DNA of 64,000 bases from Octopus sinensis (Eukaryota), in contig NC_042998.1 of NCBI RefSeq assembly GCF_006345805.1, positions 31,000,001-31,064,000 on the forward strand. The letters run 5' to 3'. The notes under the pieces are model-generated. The model searched no databases and was not told the origin of the DNA. It worked only from the letters and a program-made list of their open reading frames with translations. Position 1 is the stretch's first letter; every line of letters begins with the position of its first letter. Below are positions 30,900 through 60,622 of this stretch, in pieces. The translations under genes and the position numbers were made by a program.

Positions 30900-31009
30900 T
30901 TGCAACTTGGGTGGAGATTGTGAATGTTATTGTACAGCAGTTGCAAACTTTGCCAAAAGATGTACAAACATTGGAGTTGTAGCTAGATGGCGAAACAATG
31001 ATAGGTGTG
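30900..31009 (+). CDS. Exon 10: second half of C8-3
   Basis: ttattatag / gtaagt, 110 nt, phase 2-1; GCNLGGDCECYCTAVANFAKRC...WRNNDRC, the D3-specific C.C..GGDCEC.C.AVA motif. Confidence 0.94.
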
Positions 31010-31859
31010 GTAAGTATTCAGAAATATATTTTTGCATCAAGTTCAAAGAATAAAGCATAAATAATATGAGCAATGCTTTTGCTATATGGATCTCTCTTTT
31101 CATCACTATACATCTATTTCAATACAGTTACACTTCTTTCTTAATAACTTACACACACACACACACACATCTGTTTACTTTAGTTTGATCAAAGGCCCCA
31201 GATGTTGCTCATAAAATCTATGCTTCTAATTGTCAGCTGCCACCTGTTAATTCTATCCCCACAGTAATCTGATGGTATGGTTATACATGGAATTCCTTTC
31301 AGCTTGGTATAAATATAGCAAGAGCACTCAGCACAAACCTCTACCAAGGCAACACCAGCGTCCTCTCAACGATTAGCCGGAGGTGATTTTTAAATGAGAA
31401 TATCTGAAATAAACTCAACTGCTCTCACAAACGAGAATACTAAAAATGAACCCAACCACTCTCAAAAATTAAGTAAAAAAATTAAAAAAAAACAGAAATA
31501 TAACAGAATCCTTGTCCAGAACCAGATTGATCCCCAAATCTCATCAGTTCATGCCAGTCACAAGACCAAACATCCTTGAGAGTTTCATTCAAATCCATCC
31601 AGCAGTTTTTGAGATATCTTGTCCACTGATAAACAAACAAATACAACTGAAAACAATACCTCCACCTTTGCTAAGACAGAAATAATAATAGCAATAATAA
31701 CTTGCAGATGGAACATCATAGACTTTATTAATGTACATAAGAGGTGCAGCAATATCAGAGGAAGGTTAACAGGGAAAATAGTTTTTATGTATGGAAGGTG
31801 CATAGGTACAATTAACACTAAAAATGTGCAGAAAATAGACTCCATCAAATGTCAGCAGT

Positions 31860-31899
<40 letters not shown>

Positions 31900-31903
<4 letters not shown>

Positions 31904-32244
31904 CATAATTTACAAGATAAGGGCAGAAGAAAAATTCTAATGCCAAATATGCCGAAACAAAAAATTGTCGATAACCATTAGAATTTATGCGTCTCGAAAC
32001 AAACCGATAGAAATCTCTAAAAAATTCATATTTCATTTATATCTCGCGTATTTGCCGCTGAAGAGGGGAAAATTTCTCATGAATTAACCCCGAAATTGGA
32101 CCAATACAGTAATAACAAATTTTTTAGAGCTTTCTATCGGTTTGTTTCGAGACGCATAAATTCTAATGGTTATCGACAATTTTTTGTTTCAGCATATTTG
32201 GCATTAGAATTTTTCTTCTTCCCTTATCTTGTAAATTATGTATA
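31900..32244. repeat. Inverted repeat with 127-bp arms and a 91-bp spacer
   Basis: 31900-32026 vs 32118-32244, 3 mismatches counted by eye. Confidence 0.92.
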
Positions 32245-32486
32245 AATTTTACCTTTAAAGGCATTTTCTGATATGCTGGCCATTGATAAAATTTTTTTCC
32301 CGAAAAAAATTTTATCCTATATCAATTATATATATATATATATATAGGTTGAAAAAAAGATTAGAGATCTATAGAAATCAAATTTTTATATATAAAAGAT
32401 GGAGGTGAAAGCAGCACAAAAAAGTAAGTCTAAGACATTTCAATTTAAGAGGAAATTTAATAAAAATGGTTCTTTAAAACTTATAT

Positions 32487-32852
32487 AGGTGCAGGAGTGG
32501 CTGTATCGTAAGTAGCTTGCTTACCAACCACAAATATAACTTCCTTTCAAGTGTTGGGCCTCGTGGAAGCAATGACCGAGACTTTTGGCATTATGTTGTG
32601 CTTGAGAAGACCCATCAAGCCAAGCAAAATTGAAGTCCTGGCAGATACCAGTGTCACACAAACAGCACCCACACTGATGACACGTAAAAGCACCCATTAC
32701 ACTCTCGGAGTGGTTGGCATTAGGAAGGGCACCCACCAGCTGTAGAGAACCATACAATATCAGACTGGAGCCTAGCACAGCCTTCCAGCATGCCAGCTCA
32801 GTCAAACTCTCGAACCGATACCAGCATGGACGGACAACAGATGTTAAATGAT
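32487..32852 (+). mobile_element. SINE with family-A tRNA head and RTE 3' tail
   Basis: ggtgcaggagtggctg...cttgcttaccaaccaca head, distinct body, then the cactctcggagtggttggc...gttaaatgatgat tail. Confidence 0.7.
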
Positions 32853-33518
32853 GATATATATAAGTATAATAATGCCAAGGATCTGTAACCTTTTAAGGGA
32901 TGTTTGCATCCTAGTTCTCTGGTTTATACCAGTGTTCAGTGAAAGCTAAAGGCTTTAGTTTTATATTGATGTATATTGGTATTTAAAATATCTATGAATG
33001 AGAAAAAATAAGAAAATGGAGAAATTGACGTTGGAATGCAACTTCTTTCTGGAAATTCTCCCCTGATGAAATACCCAACATGAAAATTTTAAATTGATTT
33101 AATTTAATTTCTCTAATTGAACTAATTGGTTATGGAAATGGGTGTAGGGATAAGAATTTCATATTATGTTGATTTGATTATCTTTGAATAAACTAATGTC
33201 TATTCATCAATTTTTCCATTTTGTCCTTTTTTCTCATTCATATATATATATAGTGATAAAAAATCTACAGATGGAGAAGGACATACTACCACCATGTTCT
33301 TAATGATGAAATTAACCTCTCTATCTATATATCTACCCTCTTTGTAATGTTGGCAAATGAAATAAGTATAAAACTATACATTGTCTATTTAATTAAAAAA
33401 TTCAATTTGTGGCTGAAGATTGCTCGACATTTTAAAACTGATGTAATACTTACAGTGTTTAATAAAATGAAGTAGCATGAAATGATTGTACTACACTACC
33501 TTGGATATCCTTGTTGCT

Positions 33519-33775
<257 letters not shown>

Positions 33776-33931
33776 AGAGAGAGAGAATGAACAGAAAGAA
33801 CACAATTGTTTCGAGTATCTTTCCCCCAAGAAATAACCACTGTGCTGTGTATAATCAATTTCAAGTTTTAAATGATGTCATAAAAATGTTTAATGCACAA
33901 AATATTAAAACTAAAATATGTCCTATTTCAG

Positions 33932-34078
33932 CTGTTATGTGTGATGGGCTTCGAGTCTACAAAGAATGTGGTTCTTCCAATCCTCCAACATGTAGAGACA
34001 AACAAGAAACCCATCTTTACGACAATACTACCTTTTGTGTAGAAGGCTGTTTTTGTCCACCGGGTTATGTTGAAGACG
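33932..34078 (+). CDS. Exon 11: TIL3
   Basis: atttcag / gtaagg, 147 nt, phase 1-1; VMCDGLRVYKECGSSNPPTC...CVEGCFCPPGYVED. Confidence 0.93.
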
Positions 34079-35161
34079 GTAAGGAAGATTTGAAGTACTT
34101 AAAAAATGTTATTTCCTACGTTTTCCTCCTTGTTTTTATTTACTGTTTTTTTTCCACTTTTGCAAATATATCTTCTACTTTCAATAACTTTTTAGACTTT
34201 ATTTATTGATTGGTATCTTCGTTAAACATCTATTATTTCTCAGTCTATTAATATTGTTCACTTGCACTTCGCCTCAAGAACACAACTTCAGGATTCTTTA
34301 CATATGCAGAAGTACACAGACCACACACGCACATCACTTATCACTATGGAGTATTTAATCATATATAACTATACCTTTGGCATTCAATTATTTTTCTCAC
34401 ACATGTAACTTCCCTCCTATCTCTAAATGAACATTTTCCCTTCAGTTCCATAAAAAAAATTCAACAGCTATAGGAGAAAAAATGTTTTATTTAATTAAGA
34501 TGTTGGATTTGATTATTTAAATAGTTATTTATCTATCCAGCTACACACACACACACATACACACACTGAAAAACACAGTGTTGACTTCTAAAGCATTTAA
34601 TATACTCAATAGTATGATATGGTTGCATAACGAAATGTTGGTTCTCTACAAGTCATTAATATGTATGTACTAGCTGCCAAGAATGTCTTTAATATGTAAA
34701 TTGGTATATCCAATAATGTTACACTGCTATATTTAGTGGCTAATTAAGCAATGAGTCTGTGGATGATTAAGGGGTTGGATGGGTGCTGATGAAGTAGCAA
34801 AAACTTTTGAAATATGGCATATACACTCATTATCTATTTTTCCATCTTTGATTGCATTACACATGTTCGGATACAAAACATTGTAAGAGATCAGTGCTGA
34901 CGATAACTTCTATAGAATATCTGTAGATATAACCTTAACATGTGAGATATATATATATATATATTTATACAAGTTCTTCTACCAATGTAGCAGAATCTGC
35001 ATGAATACTGAATAGTAATACCAATATCCTACTTAAAGGCAGTGAGCTGGCAGAATCATTAGCATGATGGACAAAATGCTTAGCGATATTTCACTCATTT
35101 CTGAGTTCAAATTCTGCCGAGGTCAACTTTGCTTTTCATCCTTTCGGGGTCGATAAATTAA

Positions 35162-35382
35162 CCCTTTCATTACCAACCCAGCTGAAACTAACTTTGGCTC
35201 TGTAGTACAAATGTCTTATTTTCATAAGTTTTGAATTAAAATCTTCCACCAAACCTTAGTCACAATTTATATTCCTAACACCAGCTTAATGATAACTAAG
35301 TTATTTTACTAATTTTTTTGTTATATTTAAAGTAATTGAAAGAAACACAGAGCATCTCAAAATAAATACAATAACGGAAGGG
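35162..35382. mobile_element. piggyBac-type MITE copy 1, inserted into a SINE
   Basis: TTAA-CCCTTT...AAGGG-TTAA, 221 bp; interrupts the SINE sequence gataaaTTAAgtaccag. Confidence 0.85.
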
Positions 35383-35906
35383 TTAAGTACCAGTCAAGAA
35401 CTGGGGTCAATGTGATCGACTATCCCCTTCCCCACAAATTCCAGGCCTTGTGCTTGCAAAAGAAATTATTAATATTCTACTTAAGGTGAAATGTACTATA
35501 AGAATGTCATAATGCTGCAGTGTCCATCTTGAGAAAGCATATTATATAGATATATATTATTAAAAAGCACACAAGTATCAGTAGCAAAAGTAAGTTGAAT
35601 TCATGTGATCCAGAAGTTCTGCTGCCAGTGCTGGACATTTTTCATCTGCTACTGTTAGTTCTCTGCTTCTGAGCATTTTATGTCTAAACGAGATGCTTTA
35701 TCAAAACGAATACTGCAGTATTGTTGAATTTTTACAGTATATCCACATTAAATAGGATATACAGATTGCTTTTTAGTACTAATACTATATATAGAGATAT
35801 AAATATACACATAAACACAGACACACACACACACATAGGAATAAGGGCATACAGCAATCTAAAAGTAGTATAAAAATAAAAAATACAAAAATATGAAATC
35901 CATTAA

Positions 35907-36128
35907 CCCTTTTGTTACCGTATTTATTTTGAGGTGCTCTGTGTTTCTTTCAATTAATTTTAAATATAACAAATAATTTAGTAAAATAACTTAGTTATCA
36001 TTAAGCTAGTGTTAAGAACATAGATTGTAACTAAGGTTTGGTGGAAGATTTTAATTCAAAACTTATGAAAACAAGACATTTGTACTAGAGATCCAGAGGC
36101 GGTTTCAGCCGGATTGGTATCGAAAAGG
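35907..36128. mobile_element. piggyBac-type MITE copy 2, inverted relative to copy 1
   Basis: TTAA flanks, same family. Confidence 0.85.
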
Positions 36129-36346
36129 TTAATCTCTCAGTAGTCTTGTGAGTGAGGAGTTGTATTTGTAAGTTTGACACTCTTGTTACTTCTTGAAGTG
36201 ATGATTTTATGTACAACATTACATCTTGTTTCTAAATTTGCTCAGTTTATAAGGAAATGAAAAATATTTCTCTAATACTACCCAGAACATAAACTGCTAA
36301 AAGATCAGGATGAATTAGCATCAGAGTATTATTTTAATTTTTATAG

Positions 36347-36443
36347 GAGAAGATTGTATTAAACCAGATGACTGTGTTTGTTGGTATGAAGGGAAAATAT
36401 ATCCATCTAAAGCTGTCGTTAGATTTAACGACTGTCATAACTG
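36347..36443 (+). CDS. Exon 12: end of TIL3 and start of E3
   Basis: tttatag / gtgagt, 97 nt, phase 1-2; GEDCIKPDDCVCWYEGKIYPSKAVVRFNDCHN. Confidence 0.9.
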
Positions 36444-44274: not shown

Positions 44275-44417
44275 TACTTGTGAGGCTGGAGATATGATAT
44301 GTTACAAGTGTGACTGTACTGATGGTTTCCAGTGCACTGATCTTACGTGCATCAACAAAACTAAAGTTTGTGATGGGACCTTCGATTGCCATGATGCAAC
44401 AGATGAACTGAACTGCG
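44275..44417 (+). CDS. Exon 13: end of E3 and LDL-receptor class A repeat
   Basis: gaacag / gtaagt, 143 nt, phase 2-1; CTCEAGDMIC, then six-Cys LDLa C..GFQC....CI....VCDGTFDCHDATDELNC with the acidic calcium motif. Confidence 0.93.
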
Positions 44418-44635
44418 GTAAGTATAAAGCTTTTTTATATTTGAAATGAAAACTTTTTTTTTTTCCTTTTACTTGTTTCAGTCAGTTGAATGCGGCCATG
44501 TTGGGGCACCGCTTTTAGTCAAATTGACCCCAGAACTTATTCTTTGTAAGCCTAGTACTTATTCTCTTTGGCTGAACTGCTAAGTTACAAGAGATGTAAA
44601 CACACCACCATCAGTTGTTAAGTGATAGTGGGGGA

Positions 44636-44669
<34 letters not shown>

Positions 44670-45477
44670 AAATACACTGCTTTATTTGGAGTTTGCTAGT
44701 GTTAACAATAATCACAAATAAAATAGAGACTGGAGTTGTAGTGCTCCAAGTGAGATATATTCAACTTAATAATTTCAATTGAGGCAATACAAGCGGAAAA
44801 CTAGAGGAACATTATTAATAACCACACTCGAAAATTAAATATATATATATATGTATATATACATGCATATATATATATATATATGTATACATATATGCAT
44901 ATATATATGTATACATATATGCATATATATATGTGTGTATATATATGCATATATATATATGTGTGTATATATGCATATATATATGTATACATATATGCAA
45001 ATATATATGCATATATATAGATGTACATATATATGCATATATATATATATATCTTTTTTATTCATCTAGTTTCAGCTCACAAGCTATGGCCATGCTGGGG
45101 CATCGCCATTTGGTGTCGCTACATAATTTTACTTCGTATATATATATATATATCATCATCATCGTTTAATGTCCATTTTCCATGCTAGCATGGGTTGGAT
45201 GGTTCGACCGGGGTCTGGGAAGCCAGGAGGCTGCACCAGGCTCCAGTCTGATCTGCCAGCTGTAGAATCTCTGCCAGATCAGACTGGAGCCTGGTGCAAC
45301 CTCCTGGTTTCCCAGACCCCAGTCGAACCGTCCAACCCATGCTAACCTCGAAAACAGACATTAAATGATGATGACGATGATGATATATATATATATATAC
45401 ATACATACATACATATATATATATACATATACATACATATATATATATACATATACATACATATATACATATCATCA

Positions 45478-47428
45478 TCATCATCATCATCGTTTAGCGT
45501 CCACTTTCCATGCTAGCATGGGTTGGACGGGTCAACTGGGGTCTGTGAAGCTGGAAGGCTTCGTCAGGCCCAGTCAGATCTGGCAGTGTTTCTACGGCTG
45601 GATGCCCTTCCTAACGCCAACCACTCCGCGAGTGTAGTGGGTGTTTTTTACGTGCCACCTGCACAGGTGCCAGACAGAGCTGGCGAACGGCCACGAACGG
45701 ATGGTGCTTTTATGTGTCACCGGCACGGGGCCAGGCGATGCTGGCAACGGACACAAACGGATGGTGCTTTTACGTGCCACCGACACGGGGCCAGACAGAG
45801 CTGGCAACCGGCCACGAGCGGACGGTGCTTTTACGTGTCACCGGCACGGGGCCGGGCGAGGCTGGCAACGAACACGAACGGATGGTGCTTTTACGTGCCA
45901 CCGACACGGGGCCAGGCAGAGCTGGCAAACGGCCACGAGCAAATGGTGCTTTTACATATCACCGGCACGGGTGCCAGACGAGGCTGACAGCGGACACGAG
46001 CGGATGGGTCACTTAACCCCTGCTTTCTGATATATGATTTGATTTTGATTGTTCTCACTGGTCTTGCCGGGTCTTCTCACGCACAGCATACTTCCATAGG
46101 TCTCGGTCTCTGGTCATTTCCTTGGTGAGATCTAGAGTTCGAAGGTTGTGCTTCACCACCTCGACCCAGGTTTTCCTGGGTCTACCTCTTCCACAGGTCC
46201 CCTCAACTGCCAGGGTGTGGCACTTTTTCACACACCTATCTTCATCCATTCTCACCACATGACCATACCAGCGCAATCGTCTCTCTTGCACACAACATCT
46301 GATTCCTCTTAGGTCCAACTTTTCTCTCAAGGTACTTACACTCTGTCGACTATGAACACTGACATTACACATCCAACGGAGCATACTAGCTTCATTTCTC
46401 GCGAGCTTACGCATGTCCTCAGCAGTCACGGCCCATGTTTCATTGCCATGTAGCATGGCTGTTCATACACATGCATCATACAGTCTGCCTTTTACTCTGA
46501 GCGAGAGGCCTTTAGTCACCAACAGAGGTAAGAGCTCCCTAAACTTTGCCCAGGCTATTCTTACTCTAGCCGTTACACTTTCAGCACACCCACCCCCACT
46601 ACTGACTTCTAGTTTTTCCCCCTGGAAAGTGACGGAAGTTGTTTTCTGCAGATTTTCGGAGGTCAATACTCCCGAGCATCTGCCACATACAAAAACCATC
46701 TTCCTAGTTAGCCTTCCTATGACATTGCTGCACCTCTTATGTGTCCATAGCTTACACTTGGTGCATCTTATAGAGTTTCTACCTACACCTTTTCTACAGA
46801 TCGAGCAGGGCCATCTACCTGAAGGCGTTTGTGATTTGTCTACCTTCCTACTTATTAGGACTTTGGTTTTAGCTAGGTTGACTCTAAGGCCCTTCGATTC
46901 TAAACCATGCTTCCACACCTGAAACTTCTCTCTCCAGTTCTGATAATGACTCAGCAATTAGAGCAAGGTCATCAGCATAGAGGAGCTCCCAGGGGCATCC
47001 TGTCTTGAATTCCTCCATTATTGCCTGGAGGACTATGATAAATAGGAGGGGGCTGAGGACTGAGCCTTGGTGGACCCCTACCTCTACCCGGAATTCTTCA
47101 CTGTACTCGTTTCCAACCCTCACCTTACTAGCAGCGTCCCTGTACATGGCTTGCACAGCTCTCACTAACCATTCATCTATTCCTAGTTTCCTCATTGACC
47201 ACCATATGAGGGATCGGGGGACCTGTCAAAGGCTTTCTCCATGTCAACAAAAGCCAGGTACAGGGCCTTATCTTTGGCTAGGTATTTCTCCTGCAGCTGC
47301 CTCACCAGGAATATAGCATCAGTGGTACTTTTCCCTGGCATGAAACCAAACTGCATCTCATCTAAACTAACTCTCTCTCTAATTAGTTGGCTTATGACCC
47401 TCTCTGTAACCTTCATCACCTGATCCAA
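45478..47428 (-). mobile_element. Second, more truncated and frameshifted copy of the same RTE LINE with 3'UTR
   Basis: ORFs 46055-46456, 46463-46957 and 46884-47195 match the 658-aa ORF; 33-nt deletion removes IVDSFRYLGDQ. Confidence 0.92.
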
Positions 47429-47483
47429 ATATATATATATATATATAGCATGGAAAGCGGACGTTAAATGATGATGATGATGA

Positions 47484-49490
<2,007 letters not shown>

Positions 49491-51239
49491 AAAAGGCTCC
49501 GATCGAGTGTGATCGTTACTAGCATTGCCTTACTGCACTTTTGCCGGTGGCACATGTAAAAACATTCGAGCGAGATCATTGCCAGTACTGCCTGACTGGC
49601 CCCCATGCCAGTGGTACGTAAAATCACCCACTACACTCTCGGAGTGGTTGGCGTTAGAAAAGGCATCCAGCTGCCGAAACTCTGCCAGATCAAGATTGGA
49701 GCCTGTTGCAGCCATCTGGTTTGCCAGCCCTCAGTCAAATCATCCAACTCATGCTCGCATAGAAAGCGGACATTAAACGATGATGATGATATATGTATAT
49801 ATGGAGTAAAATTATGTAGCAACACCAAATGACAGTGCCCCAGCATGGCCACAGCTCGTAAACTGAAACTAGATGAAATAAAAAAAATAAAATATATATA
49901 TATATATATAGATATAGATACATATACATACACACACACACACACATAATATCTCATAATATCTCTTCTTTCATAGATGTATGATAAGGATTAGTACGTT
50001 TGTTGGACTGTTGAACGTGCAGATGAAAACCATGATGTATTAATCAATTTCACGCACCAACCTAACGCAAAACTTCTATTAATCTGAAGCAATTCTTGTT
50101 GAGTCCCATCCAGAACATTATCTGTCTAGTATCAGCACCTGAAAGTCAGAGACAGAGAGCTAGGCTTTATAAGTATGGCATGAGACTTGTTCTACAGCAA
50201 TGTATATATCCAAACATCATTCCGATTAAAATTGCAGCTTCTCTTTCTCGTCTCTTATATAGTTAATCCGGTTTTCCCCTAATAGTGTTCTTTTAGCATA
50301 CGCATTCTGTTATTATATGGAAATTTGTTGGATGAAGTGGACTGGCACACATCGGTGCCCCATAGTGGAACCCTGCATACACTCCTTCATTATTTGGAAT
50401 GAGTTTTATATAATCCCTGTGGATTCATACGCAACCTTTGTGCATGTGTCAGTTGTTTGTTTAGCTATGTGTTTGCCATAATGCTTGAATTAGGACATTC
50501 AAGATGCATGAAAAAAATCTGCTTTGAGTCATTTGTATAGAACAGATTAAAGTGAAGTGTAAAGAAGAGAGGAAGAAAGACATAGAGAAAGGGACGGACA
50601 GACAGACAATGTTTGAAACTGGCAGTTGTATGATGGGAGATGTACACTCACCCAGCAACCAATAAAATTTATTGTACACCACCAACCAATATAATTCAAG
50701 ATAAGCTGTAACGCTTATAATAAAATTAGTTGTTGCGATGAAGGAATTAAACCTGACGTTCTGAACAAAGATTGAAGAACCCTCGTCTCAATTCAAATCC
50801 CGTCATAGCCTGCTTCATGAGTAGACTTAATCTCTCACTTGGTTTGATACCACCACATAGCCATTGAGTATTTTTAGCACTGTGGAAAACATGCAGGCCT
50901 ACGCTTGAACCCTTCTCACCGATGTGCCAATGCCAAACGGCAGAATGACACTGCAACCAGTTTCAACGACATTGAATTCTATTTTGAACCAAGCTGCCAG
51001 ACAATTTGAGTGCACCCCCACTCAAATGAGCCATTCGTATGAGAGATGCAGCTTCTTACTGGAAGTGAAAGGTCAATGAGATAAAGGGAAAGGCTGAGGT
51101 CACATTCACCAGTGCATTCGACTTTGAAATGGTTCAGTTTGATTCATAATACGGGGAGGAAAATGATTGTTGTGAATCTAGTGAAGAGCACAAACAGATG
51201 AAAAACTGAAAATTGCTGCAAAGTAAGAGAAGATCAAGC

Positions 51240-52560
51240 TATTAACCCTTTTGCCACAAAATTGGTCTCAGGGGAAAAACTAGTGAAAATTTTAATATAA
51301 GAGATCGTATGGTGTGGAGATCGCAACAACCGGAAAAAGAAAACGGTATTTTGGCGGATCCTCACCCAAACAAAGGCAAGAGAACGCTTGCTTCTTATGT
51401 CACAAAACAAATAATACAATTGTATGTGTTGGAAGAATATTAGCATGTTTGCCCAGCTAAAATAAAAATTCTTACTATAAAGAAGAATGGAGTAAAGGTT
51501 CACCAGCAAAAGCAGCTATTGCTTGTGAATGTGCATGAACTTTTTGCGGAATACAGTAAGAAGGACTCAGCAGATCAGGTAGGCCTTTCAGGGTCTTCTG
51601 GCTTGCAAGTAAAATGGTGTGTTCCTGTTAATGCCTCAGTATGTGACCGTAAGCAACACCAAAATGCAAAATTTATCGCCACTACAATTCCCCATGTAGT
51701 CACGACTACAAAAACTTACTTGGCAAAATGTTCTCTTCCATGAACAATCATGATTACGTGCTGTTCCTGTGTCAATCATGCCCTCGCATGATTAACATTG
51801 AACAACGGAAATTGTTAGGCATTCTTCCATCATGATTTTCACTTTGACAATTTAGTAACATAGAATGAGAGTGCACATGTGGAGTGGACTGCCCTCTTAT
51901 GCCTAACAAACACAGTGAGTGACTTCATTCAAACCGCTGGCAGAGTATTTCATTCTCCATGACAGCACCATTTCATAGCAACACCTCAAGTTTCCTTAGT
52001 TATCTGAAAGATGATTTGACATCAAATCAAGCTATAGTATTTTGGGATTTTACAGGAGATTATCTTTTGGTAGTTCAGGAAGAGGTGCATGTGTTTTTTT
52101 GGAACAATTCACCCATTCATTACAGAGACCATTGGAAACCTGCAATGGACTTCAAACTATCATATCTGATTGTTTGAAACACATCACCACCAAAACGCAC
52201 GCCTCTCTTACAAGGGTTATAAAAGCACGTCAATTATAGCTGCTATTCATAAATAAGCTCCCGTACTTCAGTGACGGTGCAGCCAAACAATACAAGAACT
52301 ACAAAAGCCAAACAAATCTCTGTCATCATCAGAACGAATATAAGCTCGAGATAATTTGGAATTTCTATGCCACACCACATGGAAAGAGTTCATGTAATAG
52401 AATCGGTGGGAGAGTGAAAAGTTTGGGTCGAAAAGCAAGCTTACAAGCAGCAAAAGAAAGATAAAATCACACAGCTTCCGACATATAAAACTAGGCACGC
52501 GCAAGCATTCCAGCAATAAATTTCTTTACATGTCAGCCACCGATGTCGTCCTATATTAAA
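51240..52560 (+). mobile_element. Decayed DNA-transposon transposase, Sola2-like
   Basis: Across frames: LTLLPQNWS, QKQLL, KWC..HQN, DF..DY..VQEE, ISDCLKH, FSDGAAKQYKN, FYATPHGKSSC..IGG.VK; superfamily name from memory. Confidence 0.6.
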
Positions 52561-53298
52561 TTCATTTCGACTTGCATGCATGATTCAGTTACGCAGAGAA
52601 AGTAATTCACTCACAATACCAACACTGCCTTGTTCCTTTTTCAACAAGTAAACAGCTAATAAAAACAATAGCAGCTGATCACCATTTCACCCTTCTAGAT
52701 AAAGTATAATCAAGTAGGGTACCATTGGCTTATGTTATTAAGCTATTCTATTCGCCAGAGGACATACTATTTGTCGAACATCATGATATCTGACTTATAG
52801 ATTTCCCCAAGTAAGGTTTTTGCATTTCCACAATCCAAACTTAGAGCATTTAAGCACGTAAGGATCTCACCTGTTATCCATGTGGTTTCTCAAACCTGGC
52901 TCACCTGGTTTTAGCACCATCTAACATAGTTTTGTAAAATTTCTCTTATAGAAATTAACTCGTCTTCTCGTAAACAGTGATTTACATAATAGGTAATCAA
53001 TACATTATTAAGATTGTAATCTCTTTATATTTACTGCTTCAATATGAAATTTTATTCAAGCTTTCAAACCTAATTATTTTAGGACAAGATAATTCTGCAC
53101 ACACATATTAGGTTCGTTTTACTCCACTATGCATCTAAAAACATTCAGAAAAACAATTCATTTCTTTCAACCAAACAAAGAGTTCTTTTACAGTATCCTT
53201 CCACAAGACAATTTAATATTATTGTAAAACTCTTTGATTTAAATTTGATATCAAAAGTCATTTACTTTATGAATAAACTTCCTTCTTTTTCATTAAAG

Positions 53299-53331
53299 GA
53301 CCTCCTATCCCTACAGAAACAACACCCACTG
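53299..53331 (+). CDS. Putative Thr/Pro-rich mini-exon A (GPPIPTETTPT)
   Basis: cttctttttcattaaag acceptor, gtcagt donor, 33 nt, phase 1-1, compatible with exon 13. Confidence 0.7.
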
Positions 53332-54077
53332 GTCAGTATCAATTTTGACATCTCTCTCTGTCTTACTGAATACAATTATAAGCAGATCTCTTTTATCTCT
53401 CTCTCTATTTCTTTGTCTGTCAGTCTATCCATCCATCCATCCATCCATAGATGCCATCGCCCCACAAACTTTTCTTGAGACTCTAAAGCCAAAATCAAAT
53501 ATAATGCTTCACCTCTAGGAGGTGGGAATCTGTTATGGGCATTTGGTCAGCTAGTAAATGAAGGAAAATAATCTGGCGTCAGTGAAAATGGGTCATCTCC
53601 GTTAGAACATTTTTTTCTTACCCAACAGAGCAGTGACGAGGGATTTATAAATGGGGCTTACTTCCAATCGTAAGAACCCCCATGGTTCTACTCAGAAACT
53701 AGGGAATCCTATTTTAGTAAAATTTTTCTAATAGAAATTATCTCCCCTTCCCATAAACAGTGCTTTACATAATATGTTATCAATACATTAAGATTGTAAT
53801 CTCTTTATATTTACTGCTTCTATATCAAATTTTATTCAAGCTTTCAAACCTTATTATTTTAGTAAAAGATAATTCTGCATACACATATTTAGTTCGCTTT
53901 ACTCCACTATGCATCTTAAAACATTCAGAAATACAATTCATTTCTTTCAACTAAACAAAGAGTTGTTTTACAATATCCTTCCACAAAACAATTTAATATT
54001 ATTTTTAAACTCTATCGTTTAAATGTGATATTGAATTAATTTATTTTATAAACAAATCTTCCTTCTTTTCATTAAAG

Positions 54078-54110
54078 GAACGACAGCCTCTACAGCTACA
54101 ACAACCACTG
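54078..54110 (+). CDS. Putative Thr-rich mini-exon B (GTTASTATTTT)
   Basis: cttcttttcattaaag / gtcagt, 33 nt, phase 1-1. Confidence 0.7.
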
Positions 54111-54202
54111 GTCAGTATCAATTTTCACATCTCTCTCTACTCCTCTGCGTGTCTCTCTCTCTTATTTAATACAAGATTAAGCATATCTCTGTTTTATATA
54201 TA

Positions 54203-55145
54203 TACTAGCAGCATAGTCCGGCGTGTCCCGGGTATGTAAGAGCCCCTAATAGGCAACGACTTGCGGCTGCAGCAGCGATTAGCAGAAGTATTCCAAGGTT
54301 ATGTTGTCTGGTCATGTTTCGTCTCGTTGACTGCTTGAAGTGTTGGGGGTAAAGTCTCGAATGTAATTTCTTCCTGGTAGGAAATGGTTCACCAAAACTT
54401 AGGTTAGGCTGGAGGTTTCGATGTAATCTTTGGTTTGTATGTGGGATACCTTGAAGATTAAGTCTAGATTTCCTCCTGTGGGTTGAATTATCGATAGCTG
54501 TTTGATAGTTATTTGGGGCAGTAAGACAGTTAAAGAAGGTCGAGTTGCGTCCCCTAGACAGTCTGTGGTTTGTGTTTAATACACAAATCGTGCTATGTGT
54601 GCCACATATGATTTAATTAACCGATTTTTCCAGTAATAAAGTATCCTATTGGAATAAAAAAGGGCCATATAGCTCCTTGGAGCAGACATGATGTTCGCTG
54701 TGAATTTCAAAAAAAATTCCTGCCAATTTGGTAAAGTATTGTCGAAAATTGTCATCTTGAATTTGAACGCGATTTCCCAAATGGCATGATTTTTATCGAT
54801 TTTTCTCATGGTAAGGTATTGCATGGAAACCTAAAATCAGAATTAAGTTTCTTAGGGTAACCATTTAGCTTCACCATGAATATGGAGAAAATCGATTGCA
54901 AGTTGCGAAAACTACAACAGAAAATGTGTTGCGTATGAAAGCTTAGATTCTCGACCCCATGTCGAATTTATCGATTTTTTTCAGAACTGGGGGAACTTTT
55001 CAAAATTTCGCTATGTAGTTTTGAATTATGACATTGGGCTATGTGTGTGTCAAGTGTCATCAGAATCGGTTGAAAGCCGTGGTCGGGTGAGGTACAACCT
55101 GACAGACACCACAACAGAAAACTTGCCTTTTATAGAGAGAGATAT
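54203..55145 (+). mobile_element. Helitron-like non-autonomous repeat; partial second copy at 56206-56940
   Basis: Starts tACTAG followed by the GC-rich ccggcgtgtcccggg; ends aatcggttgaaagccg...cagaca...cttttatagagagagat; no TIR or TSD seen. Confidence 0.45.
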
Positions 55146-55265
55146 ATATTCCAACCCATGCTACAATGGAAAGCAGATGTTAAACGATGAGCACATGTAT
55201 ATACATATGTGTGGTTTCTCAAACCTGGCTCGCCTGGTTTTAGTACCATTTAACTTTGTTCTGTA

Positions 55266-56105
55266 AAATTTGGATGTTTTCACTTTTATTGGTAGATTTT
55301 TCAAATAATTTCTATGTAACTAAAAAATTTTAAACTTTGTATGCTGCTAGAATGTGTTTATAAAACATCTTTTTCTCTTGGCTTACTTTAGAAAATTATG
55401 TAGTTTGTAACATATTTGTTGTTTACTTTCTTGCATTTCGGCAATTTCAACCAATCAATGACGGCTATTGAGGTGAAAATAATTTCTGCCTTAACATTTT
55501 CTGGCGGCGTCATGTGAGAATGTCCCTGTTACATATTATATATTCGTTTCAGAAACAGATTGGGTTTATTTACATTTCTGAAGAGAAAAAAAATACCCTT
55601 CCACCCACCCATAACCCTCAAAATTGCCGAAATGCAAGAATTTAAACAACAACTATGTTACAAACTACAGAATTTTCTCAAGAAAGCCAACAGAAAAAGA
55701 TGTTTTATAAACACATTCTACCAGTATAAGAAGTTTTTAATTTTTTAGTTACATAGAAATTACTTTAAAAATCTGCTGGTCAAAGTGAAAAGATCCTCTT
55801 TTTTTTTTGTCAGAAATGTAAATAAACCTAATGACTTTCTTAAACGAATATATAATATGTGACAGGCACATTTTCATATGACGCAGCCAGCAAATGTTAC
55901 GGCAGAAATTGTTTCCAACTCAATAGACGTCCTTGATTGGGTGAAATTGCAGAATTGCACAAAATTAAACACCAAATATGTTACAAACTACAGAATTTTT
56001 TCAAGAAAGCCAAGAGAAAAAACTGTTTTATAAACACATTCTACCAGTATACGAAGTTTAAAATTTTTTAGTTACATAGAAATTATTTTTAAAATCTGCC
56101 ATCCA
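55266..56105. repeat. Foldback element: one forward arm and two inverted copies; second copy at 57056-57925
   Basis: 55270-55450 is reverse-complemented at 55620-55800, and 55270-55600 from 55800 onward. Confidence 0.75.
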
Positions 56106-56205
56106 NNNNNNNNNNNNNNNNNNNNNNNNNNNNNNNNNNNNNNNNNNNNNNNNNNNNNNNNNNNNNNNNNNNNNNNNNNNNNNNNNNNNNNNNNNNNNNN
56201 NNNNN
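56106..56205. other. Assembly gap (100 N)
   Basis: Run of 100 n. Confidence 1.
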
Positions 56206-58279
56206 TCTTTGGTTTGTATGTGGGATACCTTGAAGATTAAGTCTAGATTTCCTCCTGTGGGTTGAATTATCGATAGCTGTTTGATAGTTATTTGGGGCAG
56301 TAAGACAGTTAAAGAAGGTCGAGTTGCGTCCCCTAGACAGTCTGTGGTTTGTGTTTAATACACAAATCCGTTTGCTATGTGTGCCACATATGATTTAATT
56401 AACCGATTTTTTCCAGTAATAAAGTATCCTATTGGAATAAAAAGGGCCATATAGCTCCTTGGAGCAGACATGATGTTCGCTGTGAATTTCAAAAAAAATT
56501 CCTGCCAATTTGTTAAAGATATTGTCGAAAATATGTCATCTTGAATTTGAACGCGATTTCCCAAAATGGCATGATTTTATCGATTTTTTCTCATGGTAAG
56601 GTATTGCATGGAAAACTAAAATCAGAATTAAGTTTCTTAGGGTAACATTTAGCTTCACCATGAATATGGAGAAAATCGATTGCAAGTTGCGAAAACTACA
56701 ACAGAAAATGTGTTGCGTATGAAAAGCTTAGATTCTCGACCCCATGTCGAATTTATCGATTTTTTTCAGAACTGGGGGAACTTTTCAAAAATTTCGCTAT
56801 GTTAGTTTTGAATTATGACATTGGGCTATGTGTGTGTCAAGTTTCATCAGAATCGGTTGAAAGCCGTGGTCGGGTGAGGGTACAACCTGACAGACACACA
56901 GACAGAAAACCTGCCTTTTATATAGAGAGAGATATATATTCCAACCCATGCTACAATGGAAAGCAGATGTTAAACGATGAGCACATGTATATACATATGT
57001 GTGGTTTCTCAAACCTGGCTCGCCTGGTTTTAGTACCATTTAACTTTGTTCTGTAAAATTTGGATGTTTTCACTTTTATTGGTAGATTTTTCAAATAATT
57101 TCTATGTAACTAAAAAATTTTAAACTTTGTATGCTGCTAGAATGTGTTTATAAAACATCTTTTTCTCTTGGCTTACTTGAGAAAATTATGTAGTTTGTAA
57201 CATATTTGTTGTTTACTTTCTTGCATTTCGGCAATTTCAACCAATCAATGACGGCTATTGAGGTGAAAATAATTTCTGCCTTAACATTTTCTGGCGGCGT
57301 CATGTGAAAATGTCCCTGTTACATATTATATATTCGTTTCAGAAACAGATTGGGTTTATTTACATTTCTGAAGAGAAAAAAAATACCCTTCCACCCACCC
57401 ATAACCCTAACCTTGACCCTCAAAATTGCCGAAATGCAAGAAATTAAACAACAACTATGTTACAAACTACAGAATTTTCTCAAGAAAGCCAACAGAAAAA
57501 GATGTTTTATAAACACATTCTACCAGTATAAGAAGTTTTTAATTTTTTAGTTACATAGAAATTACTTTAAAAATCTGCTGGTCAAAGTGAAAAGATCCTC
57601 TTTTTTTTTTGTCAGAAATGTAAATAAACCTAATGACTTTCTTAAACGAATATATAATATGTGACAGGCACATTTTCATATGACGCAGCCAGCAAATGTT
57701 ACGGCAGAAATTGTTTCCAACTCAATAGACGTCCTTGATTGGGTGAAATTGCAGAATTGCACAAAATTAAACACCAAATATGTTACAAACTACAGAATTT
57801 TTTCAAGAAAGCCAAGAGAAAAAACTGTTTTATAAACACATTCTACCAGTATACGAAGTTTAAAATTTTTTAGTTACATAGAAATTATTTTTAAAATCTG
57901 ACCATCAAAGTGAAAAGATCCTAACATTTTTCTAATAGAAATTAACTTCCCTGCCCAAAATCTGTGCTTTACATAATATGTTATCAAAACATTATTAAGA
58001 TTGTAATCTCTTTATATTTACTGCTTCTGTATCAAATTTTATTCAAGCTTTCAAACTTTACTATGTTAGTAAAAGATAATTCTGCATACACATATTTAGT
58101 TCGTTTTACTCCACTATGCATCTACAAACATTCAGAATCACAATTCATTTCTTTCAACTAATCAAAGAGTTGTTTTACAATATCCTTCCACAAACAATTT
58201 AATATTATTTTTAAACTCTATAGTTTAAATGAGATATTGAATTTATTTTATGAACAAATCTTCCTTCTTTTCATTAAAG

Positions 58280-58312
58280 GAACGACTGCCTCTACAGCTA
58301 TAACAACCACTG
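58280..58312 (+). CDS. Putative Thr-rich mini-exon C (GTTASTAITTT)
   Basis: cttcttttcattaaag / gtcagt, 33 nt, phase 1-1. Confidence 0.7.
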
Positions 58313-60039
58313 GTCAGTATCAATTGTCACATCTCTCTCTAATCCTCTCTGTGTCTCTCTCTCTTATTTAATACAAGTATAAGCATATCTCTGTTACATA
58401 TAAATAATTCAAATGAAATCAAGCCCGTTTTATGCTTCACAATTACTTATGACACAATAAAGGACTGAAATGCATATTAACAGAACTGTCCAATGCTCAT
58501 ACAGTCTGCAATGTATTAAGAACATTTTTGAAACTTTTCTCATGCTAAAATCATAAAATATTACATTCAAAATGCATTTTTGTATAATTGTGTCCAAGTC
58601 GAGAGGAGCTAGATGACACTGAACAAGGATATGATATTCAGGAAAATACAATGTGCAATTTCACACTCTCATAAAAAATAATGCTACAATAGAGACAAGA
58701 GAGGTGTGAAGAAATTGTGTGAATTAAATTTTCAATGGAAACACCCTTCGACTATATAGAATGCACAAACAAATTAATAGTCCACATGAATTTGTTTTTC
58801 AGTAACAACTTCACCTCAAAACAATGGGATAATGGACCTTTTCAATATACACAAACCTATGTTTATTCATCGCATCCCTTGTAGAAAGTGCACACCAAGT
58901 GTGATGTAAGAACATCTGAAAACGAAACAGCTGAAATGTGTTTCTCGTTTAGCAAATTTGATCTGAATGTTTCCACATCTCTCAAAGCTGTTGATACTGC
59001 TAACAACTCCAAGCATTTCTCCCTATTTCTCACACACTATCGTTCTTCACTCTCTCTCACTCGTTCTACCTATTTCTCTCACTCTCACCGCCTCCTCCTC
59101 TCGTGATCTCTCTGTAATACATACATATCTACTCTCTCCAATTTTCTGCCTTATGTCCACAAACACTTAATTCAGGTCTCATTATAAATTTTCTTCAAGA
59201 TATCAAGAGAGTTAATTAAATTATTTAGGTATCTTTTTCAAAATTAGTAATGCATGATAGGCGTTGCAAATGCATTACATAATAATTTTTTGCTGATCTC
59301 ATTTCCTGACATTTCCAGAAGTCTCGCAGTTACCAGAGACAAAGCATATCTCTTTTATATCTCTCTCTCTATTTCTTTGTCTGTTAGCCTACCCATCCAT
59401 ACATCCATAGATGCCATAGCCCCGCAAACTTTCATCAGACTCTAAAGCCAAGATCAAATATAACTCTTCGCCTCTCGGATGTAGGAATCTGTTATGCGGA
59501 TTTGGTCAGCTAGTAACTGAAGGAAAATGATCTGGTGTCAGTGAAAATGGGTCATCTCCGTTAGAACATTTTTTTTCTTACCCAACAGAGCAGTGACAAG
59601 GGATTCATACTTGGGGCTTATTTCCAATCGCAAGAACCCCCATGGTTCTACTCAGAAAGTAGGGTATCCTATTTTTGTAAAATTTTCCTAATAGAAATTA
59701 TCTCCCCTTCCCATAAACAGTGCTTTAAATAATGTTATCAATACATTATTAAGATTGTAATCTCTTTATATTTACTGCTTCTATATCAAATTTTATTCAA
59801 GCTTTCAAACCTTATTCTTTCAGTACAAGATAATTCTGCATACACATATTTAGTTCGTTTTACTCCACTATGCATCTAAAAACATTCAGAAAAACAATTC
59901 ATTTCTTTCAACTAAACAAAGAGGTTTTTTACAATATCTTTTCACAAAACAATTTAATATTATTTTAAAACTCTCTGATTTAAATTTGAATATCAAATTC
60001 ATTTACTTTATGCATAAACCTTCCTCCTTTTTATTACAG

Positions 60040-60078
60040 GAATTACAGGAACCACCACACCTTATATACCCACTGGAG
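60040..60078 (+). CDS. Putative Thr/Pro-rich mini-exon D (GITGTTTPYIPTG)
   Basis: ctcctttttattacag / gtcagt, 39 nt, phase 1-1; a second in-frame acceptor lies 9 nt inside. Confidence 0.65.
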
Positions 60079-60622
60079 GTCAGTATTTAGTTTGATATCA
60101 CTCTCTACTCATCAGTTTCTCTCTCTCTCTCCCATGCCCTCTTATTACATACAAGCATAAGCATATCTATTTATATCTGTCTCTCTATCTCTCTTTCTGT
60201 CAGTCTATCCAGCCATTCATCTATCTATCTGCAAATGCCATAGCCCTGCGAATGTCTCATCAGACTCTAAAGCCAAAAACATATATAAGTCTTCACCTCG
60301 GGGAGGCAGGAATGCATTATGGGTATTTGGTCAGCTAGTAACTCTAGAAAAATAGTCTGGAGTCAATGACAATGAGTCATGTTCGTTAGACCATTTTTTT
60401 GTTGCCGATTAGAGGGGGACAAGGCATTTAATCTGGGGCTTCTTTTGGATCGTAAGAACACCTCTGGTTCTAATTAGAAAATAGGGAATCCTATGCTTGC
60501 ATTAAGGAGCATTTGGAAATGAATGCAAGGGCTGTAAATGCCCATGCATCCATTTATACACAATATGCTGTTAGATATGAAGAATATTATAATGCATTAC
60601 AATACATTTATTTAATTTATAG

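What the first reader, a model, noticed from the sequence alone, without database searches (positions are those of the whole stretch)
53299..60078. Mucin-like Thr/Pro domain built from an array of symmetric 33-39-nt micro-exons
Seen: four short segments, each with a pyrimidine-rich AG acceptor and a G|gtcagt donor. All lengths are multiples of 3, all are phase 1-1 and so match the phase left by the LDLa exon. They read GPPIPTETTPT, GTTASTATTTT, GTTASTAITTT and GITGTTTPYIPTG. None appears in the ORF track, and gene predictors would probably miss them. Established: PTS regions of vertebrate gel-forming mucins usually lie in one very large exon, and symmetric micro-exon arrays (schistosome MEGs) allow combinatorial splicing. 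Inference: this gene assembles an O-glycosylated spacer from modular micro-exons, so skipping could tune its length and glycan density without a frameshift.
Basis: partly seen in the sequence, partly recalled or inferred. Interest (0 to 1): 0.85.

Follow-up and report, generated by a model that had tools for sequence, protein, structure and literature searches.

The report
Threonine-rich micro-exon array, octopus SCO-spondin-like gene
Four tiny, frame-preserving exon-like segments that would add a threonine/proline-rich (probably sugar-coated) spacer to an octopus SCO-spondin-like mucus-type protein are really in the sequence and look like true exons, but no transcript of this locus could be checked, and the design resembles a known schistosome mucin gene layout.

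Summary
Four segments lie on the + strand at 53299-53331, 54078-54110, 58280-58312 and 60040-60078 (33, 33, 33 and 39 nt). Each has a pyrimidine tract plus AG, and a G|GTCAGT donor. All are phase 1-1 and continue the phase-1 end of the LDLa exon (44275-44417). The product is 46 residues with 22 Thr.

Each segment sits in a ~780-nt head-to-tail genomic unit. The intron flanks are 84-93% identical between units. The exon bodies are only 36-70% identical, with one 6-nt indel, and they form the least conserved stretch.

The N gap lies deep in an intron, between two 97.7% identical 1.7-kb copies. It cannot affect the frame.

The gene is an octopod SCO-spondin-like paralogue (VWD-C8-TIL-LDLa). Paralogues carry the same design after their LDLa exon:
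- annotated 36-42-nt phase 1-1 Thr/Ser/Pro exons in O. sinensis and O. vulgaris;
- an unannotated array of 54-66-nt ones in Argonauta.

There is no transcript evidence for this locus, the splice sites are weaker than in the gene's other exons, and genome-wide copy number could not be tested. Regulated skipping is untested.

The closest precedent is the schistosome SmPoMuc genes, which have ~1-kb repeats each holding a 27-bp exon. I rate this a new variant of a known kind, of moderate interest.

The parts
3644..36441 (+). Upstream exons of the same gene in the window. They encode the end of one VWD domain, C8, TIL, TIL, VWD, C8, TIL and a post-TIL Cys module. Exon cores lie near 3644-3799, 5990-6181, 8149-8379, 11420-11614, 13660-13755, 20271-20609, 20720-20879, 24799-24933, 30907-31005, 33931-34080 and 36346-36441.
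   Evidence: tblastn of Argonauta SCO-spondin-like P0003 against the window. Pfam VWD, C8, TIL and Ldl_recept_a all score above their cut-offs. Most have GTAAGT-type donors and all have YAG acceptors.
44275..44417 (+). LDLa exon, 143 nt, phase 2 at the start and phase 1 at the end (...TGC G|gtaagt).
44418..53298 (+). Putative 8.9-kb intron filled with SINE copies, LINE fragments, TA-rich microsatellite and other decayed mobile DNA. It holds no recognisable domain exon.
52927..53709 (+). Repeat unit U1, complete: ~370-nt up-flank, exon, ~380-nt down-flank.
53299..53331 (+). Micro-exon 1, 33 nt, phase 1-1, (G)PPIPTETTPT.
53710..54204 (+). Repeat unit U2. Its distal down-flank is replaced by inserted DNA.
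54078..54110 (+). Micro-exon 2, 33 nt, phase 1-1, (G)TTASTATTTT.
54205..57913 (.). Inserted DNA in intron 2. It holds a reverse SINE remnant and a foldback element with 324-nt arms. It is present as two 97.7% identical copies (54427-56103 and 56206-57906) on either side of the assembly gap 56106-56205.
57914..58400 (+). Repeat unit U3, proximal part. Its distal down-flank resumes at 59342-59669, after a ~940-nt unrelated insert at 58401-59341.
58280..58312 (+). Micro-exon 3, 33 nt, phase 1-1, (G)TTASTAITTT.
59670..60494 (+). Repeat unit U4, complete. No further unit follows before the window ends.
60040..60078 (+). Micro-exon 4, 39 nt, phase 1-1, (G)ITGTTTPYIPTG. An alternative in-frame acceptor 9 nt downstream would start the exon at 60049.

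Best explanation
The four segments are most likely real coding micro-exons of an octopod SCO-spondin-like gene. That gene encodes a secreted protein with VWD-C8-TIL modules, which in its relatives link molecules by disulfide bonds, followed by an LDLa module.

Spliced after the LDLa exon, the segments add G-x10 modules. Together these make a Thr/Pro-rich linker (46 residues in this window, 22 of them Thr). By composition it should carry dense mucin-type O-glycans and act as a stiff, hydrated spacer.

The linker is built from a ~780-nt genomic unit (intron, exon, intron) that was duplicated head to tail. Every exon is symmetric (phase 1-1), so gain or loss of units by unequal crossing-over between the near-identical introns keeps the reading frame. 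So does skipping of any exon. The exon bodies are ACN-rich, slippage-prone tracts. They turn over much faster than the introns, which are either kept alike by recombination between units or constrained because short exons with weak sites need intronic help to be recognised.

Shown: the anatomy, the phase, the contrast in evolutionary rate, the gene's identity, and the same design in paralogues. Inferred: that these exons are spliced in, that the product is glycosylated, and that copy number or splicing varies.
For: 1. Anatomy and phase: the four segments and the LDLa exon fit together in phase 1.

2. Rate contrast: flank identity between units is 84-93%, exon identity 36-70%. Fisher p ranges from 0.04 down to 1.6e-10 for five of six pairs. 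U2 and U3 are a recent pair at 94%. The only indel inside the exon is 6 nt. The variable block starts right after the AG and stops at the GGTCAGTAT that is invariant in all four.

3. Composition: exon GC is 46-52% against 23-35% in the flanks.

4. Specificity: Thr-rich phase 1-1 candidates occur only here in the window. In three relatives' loci they occur only downstream of the LDLa exon or between downstream domain exons, always on the gene strand.

5. Gene identity: Pfam VWD, C8, TIL and LDLa. The nearest named relatives are SCO-spondin-like proteins of Argonauta hians, Octopus vulgaris, O. sinensis and O. bimaculoides.

6. Precedent in paralogues:
- O. sinensis XP_036370413.1 and O. vulgaris CAI9741631.1 read ...EEDC-PTTVTTYTTFMPT-G. 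In O. sinensis DNA this is a 39-nt phase 1-1 exon, 4.3 kb after the LDLa exon (L003 36457-36495).
- The O. vulgaris model continues with 12- and 14-residue Ser/Thr/Pro repeats.
- O. vulgaris locus L005 has annotated 42-nt and 36-nt phase 1-1 exons, APSSPTPYLGSSPT and GPSVSGAAVTPA.
- Argonauta paralogue L004 has, within 12 kb after its LDLa exon, nine 54-66-nt phase 1-1 Thr-rich exons with GTAAGT or GTGAGT donors, arranged in ~2.1-kb tandem units.

7. No other domain exon is detectable between 44418 and 64000.

8. SCO-spondin(-like) proteins are reported in the O. vulgaris skin-mucus proteome (PMC11431876).
Against: - No transcript or protein containing these exons was found. Three protein searches and one exhaustive search found no product that includes these micro-exons; the only orthologous proteins found cover upstream exons (P0153, Argonauta; P0120, a genomic ORF).
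- Splice sites are weaker than in the gene's other exons. The donor is GTCAGT, where nine of the twelve other exon ends examined have GTAAGT or GTAAGG; the acceptor is AAG in three of four, where the others have YAG.
- The Argonauta orthologue has no such exon in the 6.4 kb held after its LDLa exon. The octopus ones start 8.9 kb downstream, so this is weak evidence.
- Only 46 residues are encoded in the window, and the downstream continuation of the gene lies outside it.
- Paralogous units share ancestry, so their common features are not four independent observations.
Confidence: 0.7

Rival explanations
1. Pseudo-exons. The array is a non-coding intronic (or post-genic) tandem duplication whose ACN-rich core merely looks like an exon. 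The real transcript skips all four units or ends before them.
For: - No transcript evidence was found.
- The sites are weak: an AAG acceptor and a GTCAGT donor, against YAG and mostly GTAAGT-type donors in the gene's other exons.
- Two of the three frames are open in all four copies, so openness alone is weak evidence.
- An ACC/CCA microsatellite can mimic Thr/Pro coding, as in the Argonauta intron L001 16604-16830.
Against: - The fast-evolving block is bounded exactly by AG and GT.
- Its only indel is a multiple of 3.
- Its Thr-rich frame is the one demanded by the LDLa exon.
- Paralogues have annotated exons of the same size, phase, composition and 3' end (...CCN ACN G|gt) in the same position.
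Confidence: 0.2
2. Dispersed repeat. The ~780-nt unit is a mobile or satellite element found genome-wide, and the exon-like core is part of that element rather than of this gene.
For: The genome could not be searched. The surrounding introns are full of mobile DNA.
Against: - Within 64 kb, all copies are in one head-to-tail cluster on the gene strand. None occurs in the other 52 kb or in the 200 kb of related loci fetched.
- There are no terminal repeats and no coding capacity.
- ORFs from the unit matched no protein in 5.8 billion.
Confidence: 0.05
3. Non-coding host-gene layout. This would be an array of poorly conserved short exons separating conserved introns that each carry a small RNA, as in snoRNA host clusters.
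For: Conserved introns with divergent exons are the hallmark of such clusters. A block 70-310 nt upstream of each acceptor is 92-96% identical.
Against: - No Rfam match, even at E=1.
- No C/D or H/ACA box visible by eye in the consensus.
- The only stable hairpin is confined to the recent pair U2/U3 and is absent in U1 and U4.
- The flank is 23-25% G+C.
- This reading does not explain the conserved phase or the Thr-rich frame.
Confidence: 0.03

Closest known systems
SmPoMuc (Schistosoma mansoni polymorphic mucins), the tandem exon-2 genomic repeats
   Same: - Genomic units of about 1 kb, each holding one very short exon (27 bp there, 33-39 bp here) that encodes a mucin-like repeat.
- Units lie head to tail.
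- The intron part is highly conserved between units.
- An imperfect dinucleotide microsatellite lies beside the exon: (GA)n there, a CT-rich run just after the donor here.
- The symmetric exons keep the frame whatever their number (PMC2576457).
   Different: - No sequence relationship, and a different phylum.
- SmPoMuc exons are near-identical between units, with up to 20 per gene. Here there are four units with strongly diverged exons.
- The host protein here is a large VWD-C8-TIL-LDLa protein, not a small secreted mucin.
- Variable repeat number in transcripts and trans-splicing are shown for SmPoMuc and untested here.
Schistosome micro-exon genes (MEGs)
   Same: Short symmetric exons whose lengths are multiples of 3, which allows in-frame exon skipping (summary in PMC4015677).
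   Different: In MEGs the micro-exons make up most of a small secreted protein and are not tandem copies of one unit. Here they form a short linker within a very large multidomain gene.
SCO-spondin / SCO-spondin-like proteins of cephalopods (e.g. GAB1608825.1, CAI9741631.1, XP_036370413.1, XP_036361565.1)
   Same: The domain order VWD-C8-TIL ... LDLa and the sequence similarity. In the paralogues too, Ser/Thr/Pro-rich stretches follow the LDLa region.
   Different: - The window's gene is a separate paralogue, about 40-44% identical to those named proteins. Its true Argonauta orthologue (L001) is 56-77% identical exon by exon.
- Only one LDLa exon is seen.
- The N-terminal part and everything after the linker lie outside the window.
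Vertebrate gel-forming mucins (MUC2, MUC5AC, MUC5B, MUC6)
   Same: N-terminal VWD-C8-TIL assemblies followed by Pro/Thr/Ser-rich, presumably O-glycosylated sequence.
   Different: From my own knowledge, not tested here: in those genes the PTS region is one very large exon. Here it is split into 33-39-nt exons with kilobase introns, and an LDLa module intervenes.

Membership tests
SCO-spondin-like proteins | Repeated VWD-C8-TIL modules | tested here: met
   Pfam VWD 112 bits, C8 90 bits, TIL 62 bits, all above their cut-offs. Exons were mapped with P0003.
SCO-spondin-like proteins | LDL-receptor class A module(s) after the last VWD-C8-TIL module | tested here: met
   Ldl_recept_a scores 25.6 bits against a cut-off of 24.1. 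Exon 44275-44417 aligns to the first LDLa of P0003, P0005, P0011 and P0157. Only one LDLa exon is found in the window.
SCO-spondin-like proteins | N-terminal EMI domain and C-terminal thrombospondin repeats / CTCK | not testable with these tools
   The window starts inside the gene, at about residue 674 of P0003, and ends before any further domain exon.
SCO-spondin-like proteins | Closest named relatives are SCO-spondin(-like) | tested here: met
   The best hits carry that name in Argonauta hians, O. vulgaris, O. sinensis and O. bimaculoides. These names come from automatic annotation.
Gel-forming mucins | Long central PTS region encoded by one large exon, with CysD and C-terminal VWC/CK domains | tested here: not met
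   The Thr-rich sequence is split into 33-39-nt exons and amounts to only 46 residues in the window. CysD and CK could not be looked for, because they would lie outside the window.
SmPoMuc-type tandem micro-exon repeats (architecture, not homology) | Head-to-tail genomic units of about 1 kb, each with one short symmetric exon encoding a mucin-like repeat | tested here: met
   Start-to-start spacing is 780 nt where no insertion has occurred. There are four units with 33-39-nt phase 1-1 exons.
SmPoMuc-type tandem micro-exon repeats (architecture, not homology) | Intron part of the units highly conserved (>94% in SmPoMuc) | tested here: inconclusive
   Identity is 84-93% over the 372-nt up-flank and 92-96% in its central block. 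This is conserved relative to the exon but below the SmPoMuc figure.
SmPoMuc-type tandem micro-exon repeats (architecture, not homology) | Transcripts with variable numbers of the repeat exon | not testable with these tools
   No transcript data for this species or locus was reachable.
Schistosome micro-exon genes (MEG) | Micro-exons make up most of the coding sequence of a small secreted protein | tested here: not met
   Here they are a short linker in a gene with at least 12 ordinary exons in this window alone.

The most novel reading that the evidence does not exclude
Octopods have turned a family of SCO-spondin-like mucus proteins into a modular system. In it, O-glycosylated spacers are assembled from arrays of symmetric micro-exons with conserved introns and fast-evolving exon bodies. 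Unit gain and loss plus regulated exon choice would then produce individually or tissue-specifically variable glycoprotein spacers. This would be an independent, free-living-animal counterpart of the schistosome SmPoMuc 'controlled chaos'.
Probability: 0.15. Interest if true: 0.75.

Novelty: new variant of a known kind. Interest (0 to 1): 0.5.

Why it matters
If these exons are used, three things follow.

1. A mucin-type spacer in a VWD-C8-TIL protein can be encoded as a string of tiny symmetric exons rather than as one giant exon. That form can change length in whole modules, by recombination between introns or by splicing.

2. It explains a practical problem. Gene models of this family in several cephalopod genomes break off exactly where these arrays start, so the proteins are probably much longer and more glycosylated than annotated.

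3. It gives a concrete locus for asking whether conserved introns around fast-evolving micro-exons reflect splicing control or concerted evolution.

Tried and rejected
1. The first protein search used the conceptual spliced product including the Thr-rich tail. It returned only two distant hits and missed relatives found later, probably because low-complexity words swamped the candidate stage.

2. ORFs from the repeat unit's introns were used as bait, to find copies of the unit in other genomes or elsewhere in this one. Nothing was found.

3. Exact look-ups of three window ORFs, two in the units and one beside the gap, were not on record. No second assembly could therefore be used to close the gap.

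4. Tandem Repeats Finder reports nothing, because the period exceeds its limit.

5. Argonauta orthologue (L001): the apparent Thr/Pro match 40 nt after its LDLa exon is an intronic (CCA)n microsatellite next to a SINE. It has no acceptor, so I rejected it as evidence. No micro-exon candidate lies in the 6.4 kb held downstream.

6. In O. sinensis L003, no further micro-exon is found in the 10 kb after the 39-nt exon.

7. DNA for the long O. vulgaris and O. sinensis models could not be fetched, because the gene ranges are 262 kb and 110 kb. Whether their 12- and 14-residue repeats are one exon each is therefore inferred from the neighbouring locus L005 only.

8. The small-RNA host idea failed: no Rfam hit and no conserved hairpin.

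9. The shared TCATTAAAG|G acceptor between the window and one Argonauta exon is only a 10-mer, too short to count as homology.

10. U2 and U3 are not an assembly duplicate of one unit. The duplicated insert lies downstream of the U2 exon and upstream of U3, and the units differ more (7%) than the insert copies do (2.3%).

Full report
**Observation**

Reading 53000-60400 and extracting the candidate segments with their flanks confirms four exon-like segments on the + strand.

| Segment | Coordinates | Length |
|---|---|---|
| 1 | 53299-53331 | 33 nt |
| 2 | 54078-54110 | 33 nt |
| 3 | 58280-58312 | 33 nt |
| 4 | 60040-60078 | 39 nt |

- Each is preceded by a pyrimidine-rich tract and AG: cattaaAG in three, ttattacAG in the fourth.
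- Each is followed by G|GTCAGTAT.
- All lengths are multiples of three.
- In phase 1-1 they read (G)PPIPTETTPT, (G)TTASTATTTT, (G)TTASTAITTT and (G)ITGTTTPYIPTG.
- The LDLa exon 44275-44417 is 143 nt. It starts in phase 2 and ends ...TGC G|gtaagt in phase 1, so the join is in frame.
- Exon 4 has a second in-frame AG 9 nt further on.
- The 46-residue product has 22 Thr, 2 Ser, 6 Pro and 6 Gly. The exons are 46-52% G+C in flanks of 23-35%.

**The gap**

The only N run is 56106-56205. It lies 1995 nt downstream of the donor of exon 2 and 2074 nt upstream of the acceptor of exon 3, so it is deep in an intron.

The 1.7 kb to its left (54427-56103) and to its right (56206-57906) are direct copies, 97.7% identical. 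They differ by 22 substitutions and 14 small indels, many of them in short base runs.

- The left copy stops within about 10 nt of where the right copy runs into the next repeat unit.
- This is what an unmerged overlap of two contig ends, or of two haplotypes, looks like. A real, recent tandem duplication would look the same.
- In both cases the two sides are neighbours in the same orientation.
- The reading frame does not depend on the gap, because each exon is delimited by its own splice sites and is symmetric.
- What stays open is the true intron length (about 2.4 or 4.2 kb) and whether the gap hides anything more.
- The filler of this intron is ordinary. It holds a reverse-oriented SINE remnant and a foldback element with 324-nt arms.

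**Repeat structure**

The segments are not isolated. Each sits in a ~780-nt unit made of ~370 nt of up-flank, the exon, and ~380 nt of down-flank. The units are arranged head to tail.

| Unit | Coordinates | State |
|---|---|---|
| U1 | 52927-53709 | Complete |
| U2 | 53710-54204 | Then the insert with the gap |
| U3 | 57914-58400 and 59342-59669 | Split by a ~940-nt insert |
| U4 | 59670-60494 | Complete |

A BLAST of the unit against the whole window finds only these copies, all on the + strand.

**Rate contrast**

In the four-way alignment (A1) the up-flank is 84-93% identical between units, and its central block 92-96%. The exon columns are 36-70% identical, except for the recent pair U2/U3 at 94%.

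- The exon is the least conserved 39-column window of the first 440 columns.
- The difference is significant in five of six pairs, with Fisher p from 0.04 down to 1.6e-10.
- The variable block begins two to three bases after the AG and ends at the invariant GGTCAGTAT.
- Its only length change is 6 nt, whereas indels in the flanks have lengths 1, 2, 3 and 5.
- So the 33-39 nt evolve under a different regime from their surroundings, with boundaries at the splice signals, while the Thr-rich frame and the symmetry stay intact.
- The four units share ancestry, so this is one pattern, not four independent ones.

**Chance**

A mechanical scan looked for a pyrimidine tract + AG, an open phase 1-1 segment of 18-75 nt with at least 60% Thr/Ser/Pro, then GT. 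On both strands of the window it returns these four as the only Thr-dominated hits. The remainder lie in transposon-derived or other intronic sequence, have poor donors and are not Thr-rich.

**The gene**

The ORF list, tblastn with a relative and Pfam show a + strand gene. Its exons in this window encode the end of a VWD domain, then C8, TIL, TIL, VWD, C8, TIL, a Cys-rich module and one LDLa.

- An exhaustive profile-free search of 1.8 billion representatives found 1640 relatives.
- The closest named ones are SCO-spondin-like proteins of Argonauta hians (GAB1608825.1), Octopus vulgaris (CAI9741631.1), O. sinensis (XP_036370413.1, XP_036361565.1) and O. bimaculoides (XP_014781837.2). All are 40-44% identical, so they are paralogues.
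- The true Argonauta orthologue is an incompletely annotated locus on the same contig as GAB1608825.1, about 190 kb away. Its exons are 56-77% identical (L001).
- No product that includes the micro-exons was found in any Octopus species. No protein containing this gene's LDLa exon turned up in the word-indexed search.
- The window itself looks octopod, from its characteristic SINE and its TA-rich microsatellites. A short genomic contig from a related species is 81% identical.

**Independent support from paralogues**

1. The O. sinensis and O. vulgaris models of one paralogue read ...EEDC-PTTVTTYTTFMPT-G.
   - In O. sinensis DNA the LDLa exon ends ...TGT C|gtaagt, which is phase 1.
   - The peptide is a 39-nt exon, ttttcag|CAACAACAGTG...GCCAACAG|gtttgt, lying 4.3 kb downstream and in phase 1-1 (L003 36457-36495).
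   - The O. sinensis model ends there by reading into the intron ('GL*'). The O. bimaculoides model does the same.
   - The O. vulgaris model goes on with runs of 14-residue (YSASIPTASSAVPP) and 12-residue (SGPSVSSIAVTP) repeats between copies of a ~130-residue domain.
   - Its DNA could not be fetched, because the gene spans 262 kb.
2. A neighbouring O. vulgaris locus has annotated exons of 42 nt (APSSPTPYLGSSPT, cag|...|gttagt) and 36 nt (GPSVSGAAVTPA, cag|...|gtaagg). Both are phase 1-1 (L005).
3. In the Argonauta paralogue, the 12 kb after the LDLa exon (which ends in phase 1 with G, as here) hold nine Thr-rich phase 1-1 exons of 54-66 nt.
   - They have GTAAGT or GTGAGT donors and sit in ~2.1-kb tandem units that are 94-98% identical.
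   - They lie beyond the end of the published model (L004 88439-97254).
   - Across L004's 98 kb, Thr-dominated candidates occur nowhere else.

Many of these exons end ...CCN ACN G|gt, as do exons 1 and 4 here.

So short symmetric Thr/Ser/Pro exons following the LDLa exon are a family trait, and some are already in public gene models.

**Weaknesses**

- No transcript of this locus could be reached.
- The gene's other exons have YAG acceptors, and nine of twelve have GTAAGT or GTAAGG donors. The micro-exons have GTCAGT in all four, and AAG acceptors in three of four. This fits regulated exons and pseudo-exons equally well.
- Two of the three frames are open in all four copies.
- The Argonauta orthologue shows no such exon in the 6.4 kb available after its LDLa exon. 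The Thr/Pro-like match there is an intronic (CCA)n microsatellite.
- Genome-wide copy number of the unit is unknown.

**Mechanism**

The best reading is that the four segments are spliced after the LDLa exon and add a Thr/Pro-rich linker, presumably O-glycosylated, to a secreted multimer-forming protein. The linker grows and shrinks in whole modules because each module is a symmetric exon inside a duplicated unit.

Shown:
- the anatomy and the phase;
- the rate contrast;
- the gene's identity;
- the family precedent.

Inferred:
- that these exons are used;
- glycosylation;
- variation in copy number;
- any role of exon skipping.

The conserved introns may reflect recombination between units or splicing control. 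The data do not separate these two.

SCO-spondin(-like) proteins are listed among O. vulgaris skin-mucus proteins (PMC11431876). This fits a mucus role for the family but says nothing about this paralogue.

**Rivals**

- Pseudo-exons in a non-coding tandem repeat: about 0.2.
- A dispersed element: about 0.05. All copies found are local, and bait ORFs from the unit hit nothing.
- A small-RNA host layout: about 0.03. There is no Rfam hit at E=1, and the only stable hairpin is limited to U2/U3.

**Comparison with what is known**

The nearest architecture is the SmPoMuc genes of Schistosoma mansoni. They have ~1-kb genomic repeats, each with a 27-bp exon encoding a mucin-like repeat. Their introns are more than 94% identical, imperfect dinucleotide microsatellites sit between units, and there are up to 20 units per gene (PMC2576457; PMC4015677).

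- The layout here matches, down to the CT-rich run after each donor.
- There is no homology, the exons here have diverged, and the host protein is different.
- Schistosome MEGs share the symmetric micro-exons but not the tandem units or the gene type.
- Vertebrate gel-forming mucins share the VWD-C8-TIL head, but they encode PTS in one large exon (my own knowledge, not tested here).
- Searches of the held literature found no description of such exons in cephalopods.

**Verdict**

- This is a new variant of a known kind.
- Confidence that these are real coding exons is about 0.7.
- Interest is moderate, at 0.5.

Noticed in passing
L004 88439-97254 (Argonauta hians BAAFZT010000070.1, about 1859900-1868730): An unannotated array of nine phase 1-1 Thr-rich exons of 54-66 nt, with GTAAGT or GTGAGT donors, in ~2.1-kb tandem units. 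It lies directly beyond the end of the published SCO-spondin-like model GAB1608825.1.
   Followed up: partly
L003 36457-36503; proteins P0156, P0005, P0003: Published gene models of this family stop or read into the intron exactly at the first Thr-rich micro-exon. XP_036370413.1 ends 'PTGL*' and XP_014781837.2 ends in intron read-through. These proteins are probably truncated in the databases.
   Followed up: partly
window cols 65-300 of alignment A1, e.g. 53000-53230, 53775-54010, 57985-58215, 59740-59975: An intronic block 70-310 nt upstream of each micro-exon is 92-96% identical between units, more than the rest of the unit. It could be a splicing control element or simply the core of recent recombination. 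No RNA family or conserved fold was found.
   Followed up: partly
window 60040-60049: Two in-frame acceptor AGs lie 9 nt apart at micro-exon 4 (ttattacAG|GAATTACAG|GAACC). They would give products that differ by three residues (ITG).
   Followed up: no
window 55265-56101 and 57055-57924: A foldback-type element with 303- to 324-nt inverted arms (87% complementary, ~210-nt spacer) is inserted at the 5' edge of unit U3. The sequence just before it (55210-55271) matches the sequence just before unit U1 (52881-52942) at 90%.
   Followed up: partly
window 27534-29510 (+) and 46055-47728 (-): An intact 658-aa ORF that looks like a LINE/retrotransposon reverse transcriptase sits in an intron. Decayed fragments of the same element lie on the other strand in the intron after the LDLa exon.
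   Followed up: no
window 8906-9136, 10101-10712, 15803-16150: ORF fragments with mariner/Tc1-type transposase motifs lie inside introns of the gene.
   Followed up: no
window 45152-45670, 62334-62522, and about ten more places (e.g. 5444-5607, 7801-7951, 11755-11917, 29965-30122): Many copies of one SINE (ATCATCATC-GTTTAACGTCC...CCATGCTAGCATGGGTTGG...) are present. They are also abundant in the Argonauta loci. The copies are often followed by long TA/TATG microsatellites (47444-49560, 62540-63940).
   Followed up: no
L001 16604-16830: In the Argonauta orthologue, a (CCA)n microsatellite begins 40 nt after the LDLa exon's donor. It translates as poly-Thr or poly-Pro and can be mistaken for a PTS exon by protein-to-DNA searches.
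   Followed up: yes
Argonauta contig BAAFZT010000070.1, 1781475-1859808 and 2049627-2072619: Two SCO-spondin-like paralogues lie about 190 kb apart on one contig, which suggests a tandem gene family.
   Followed up: no
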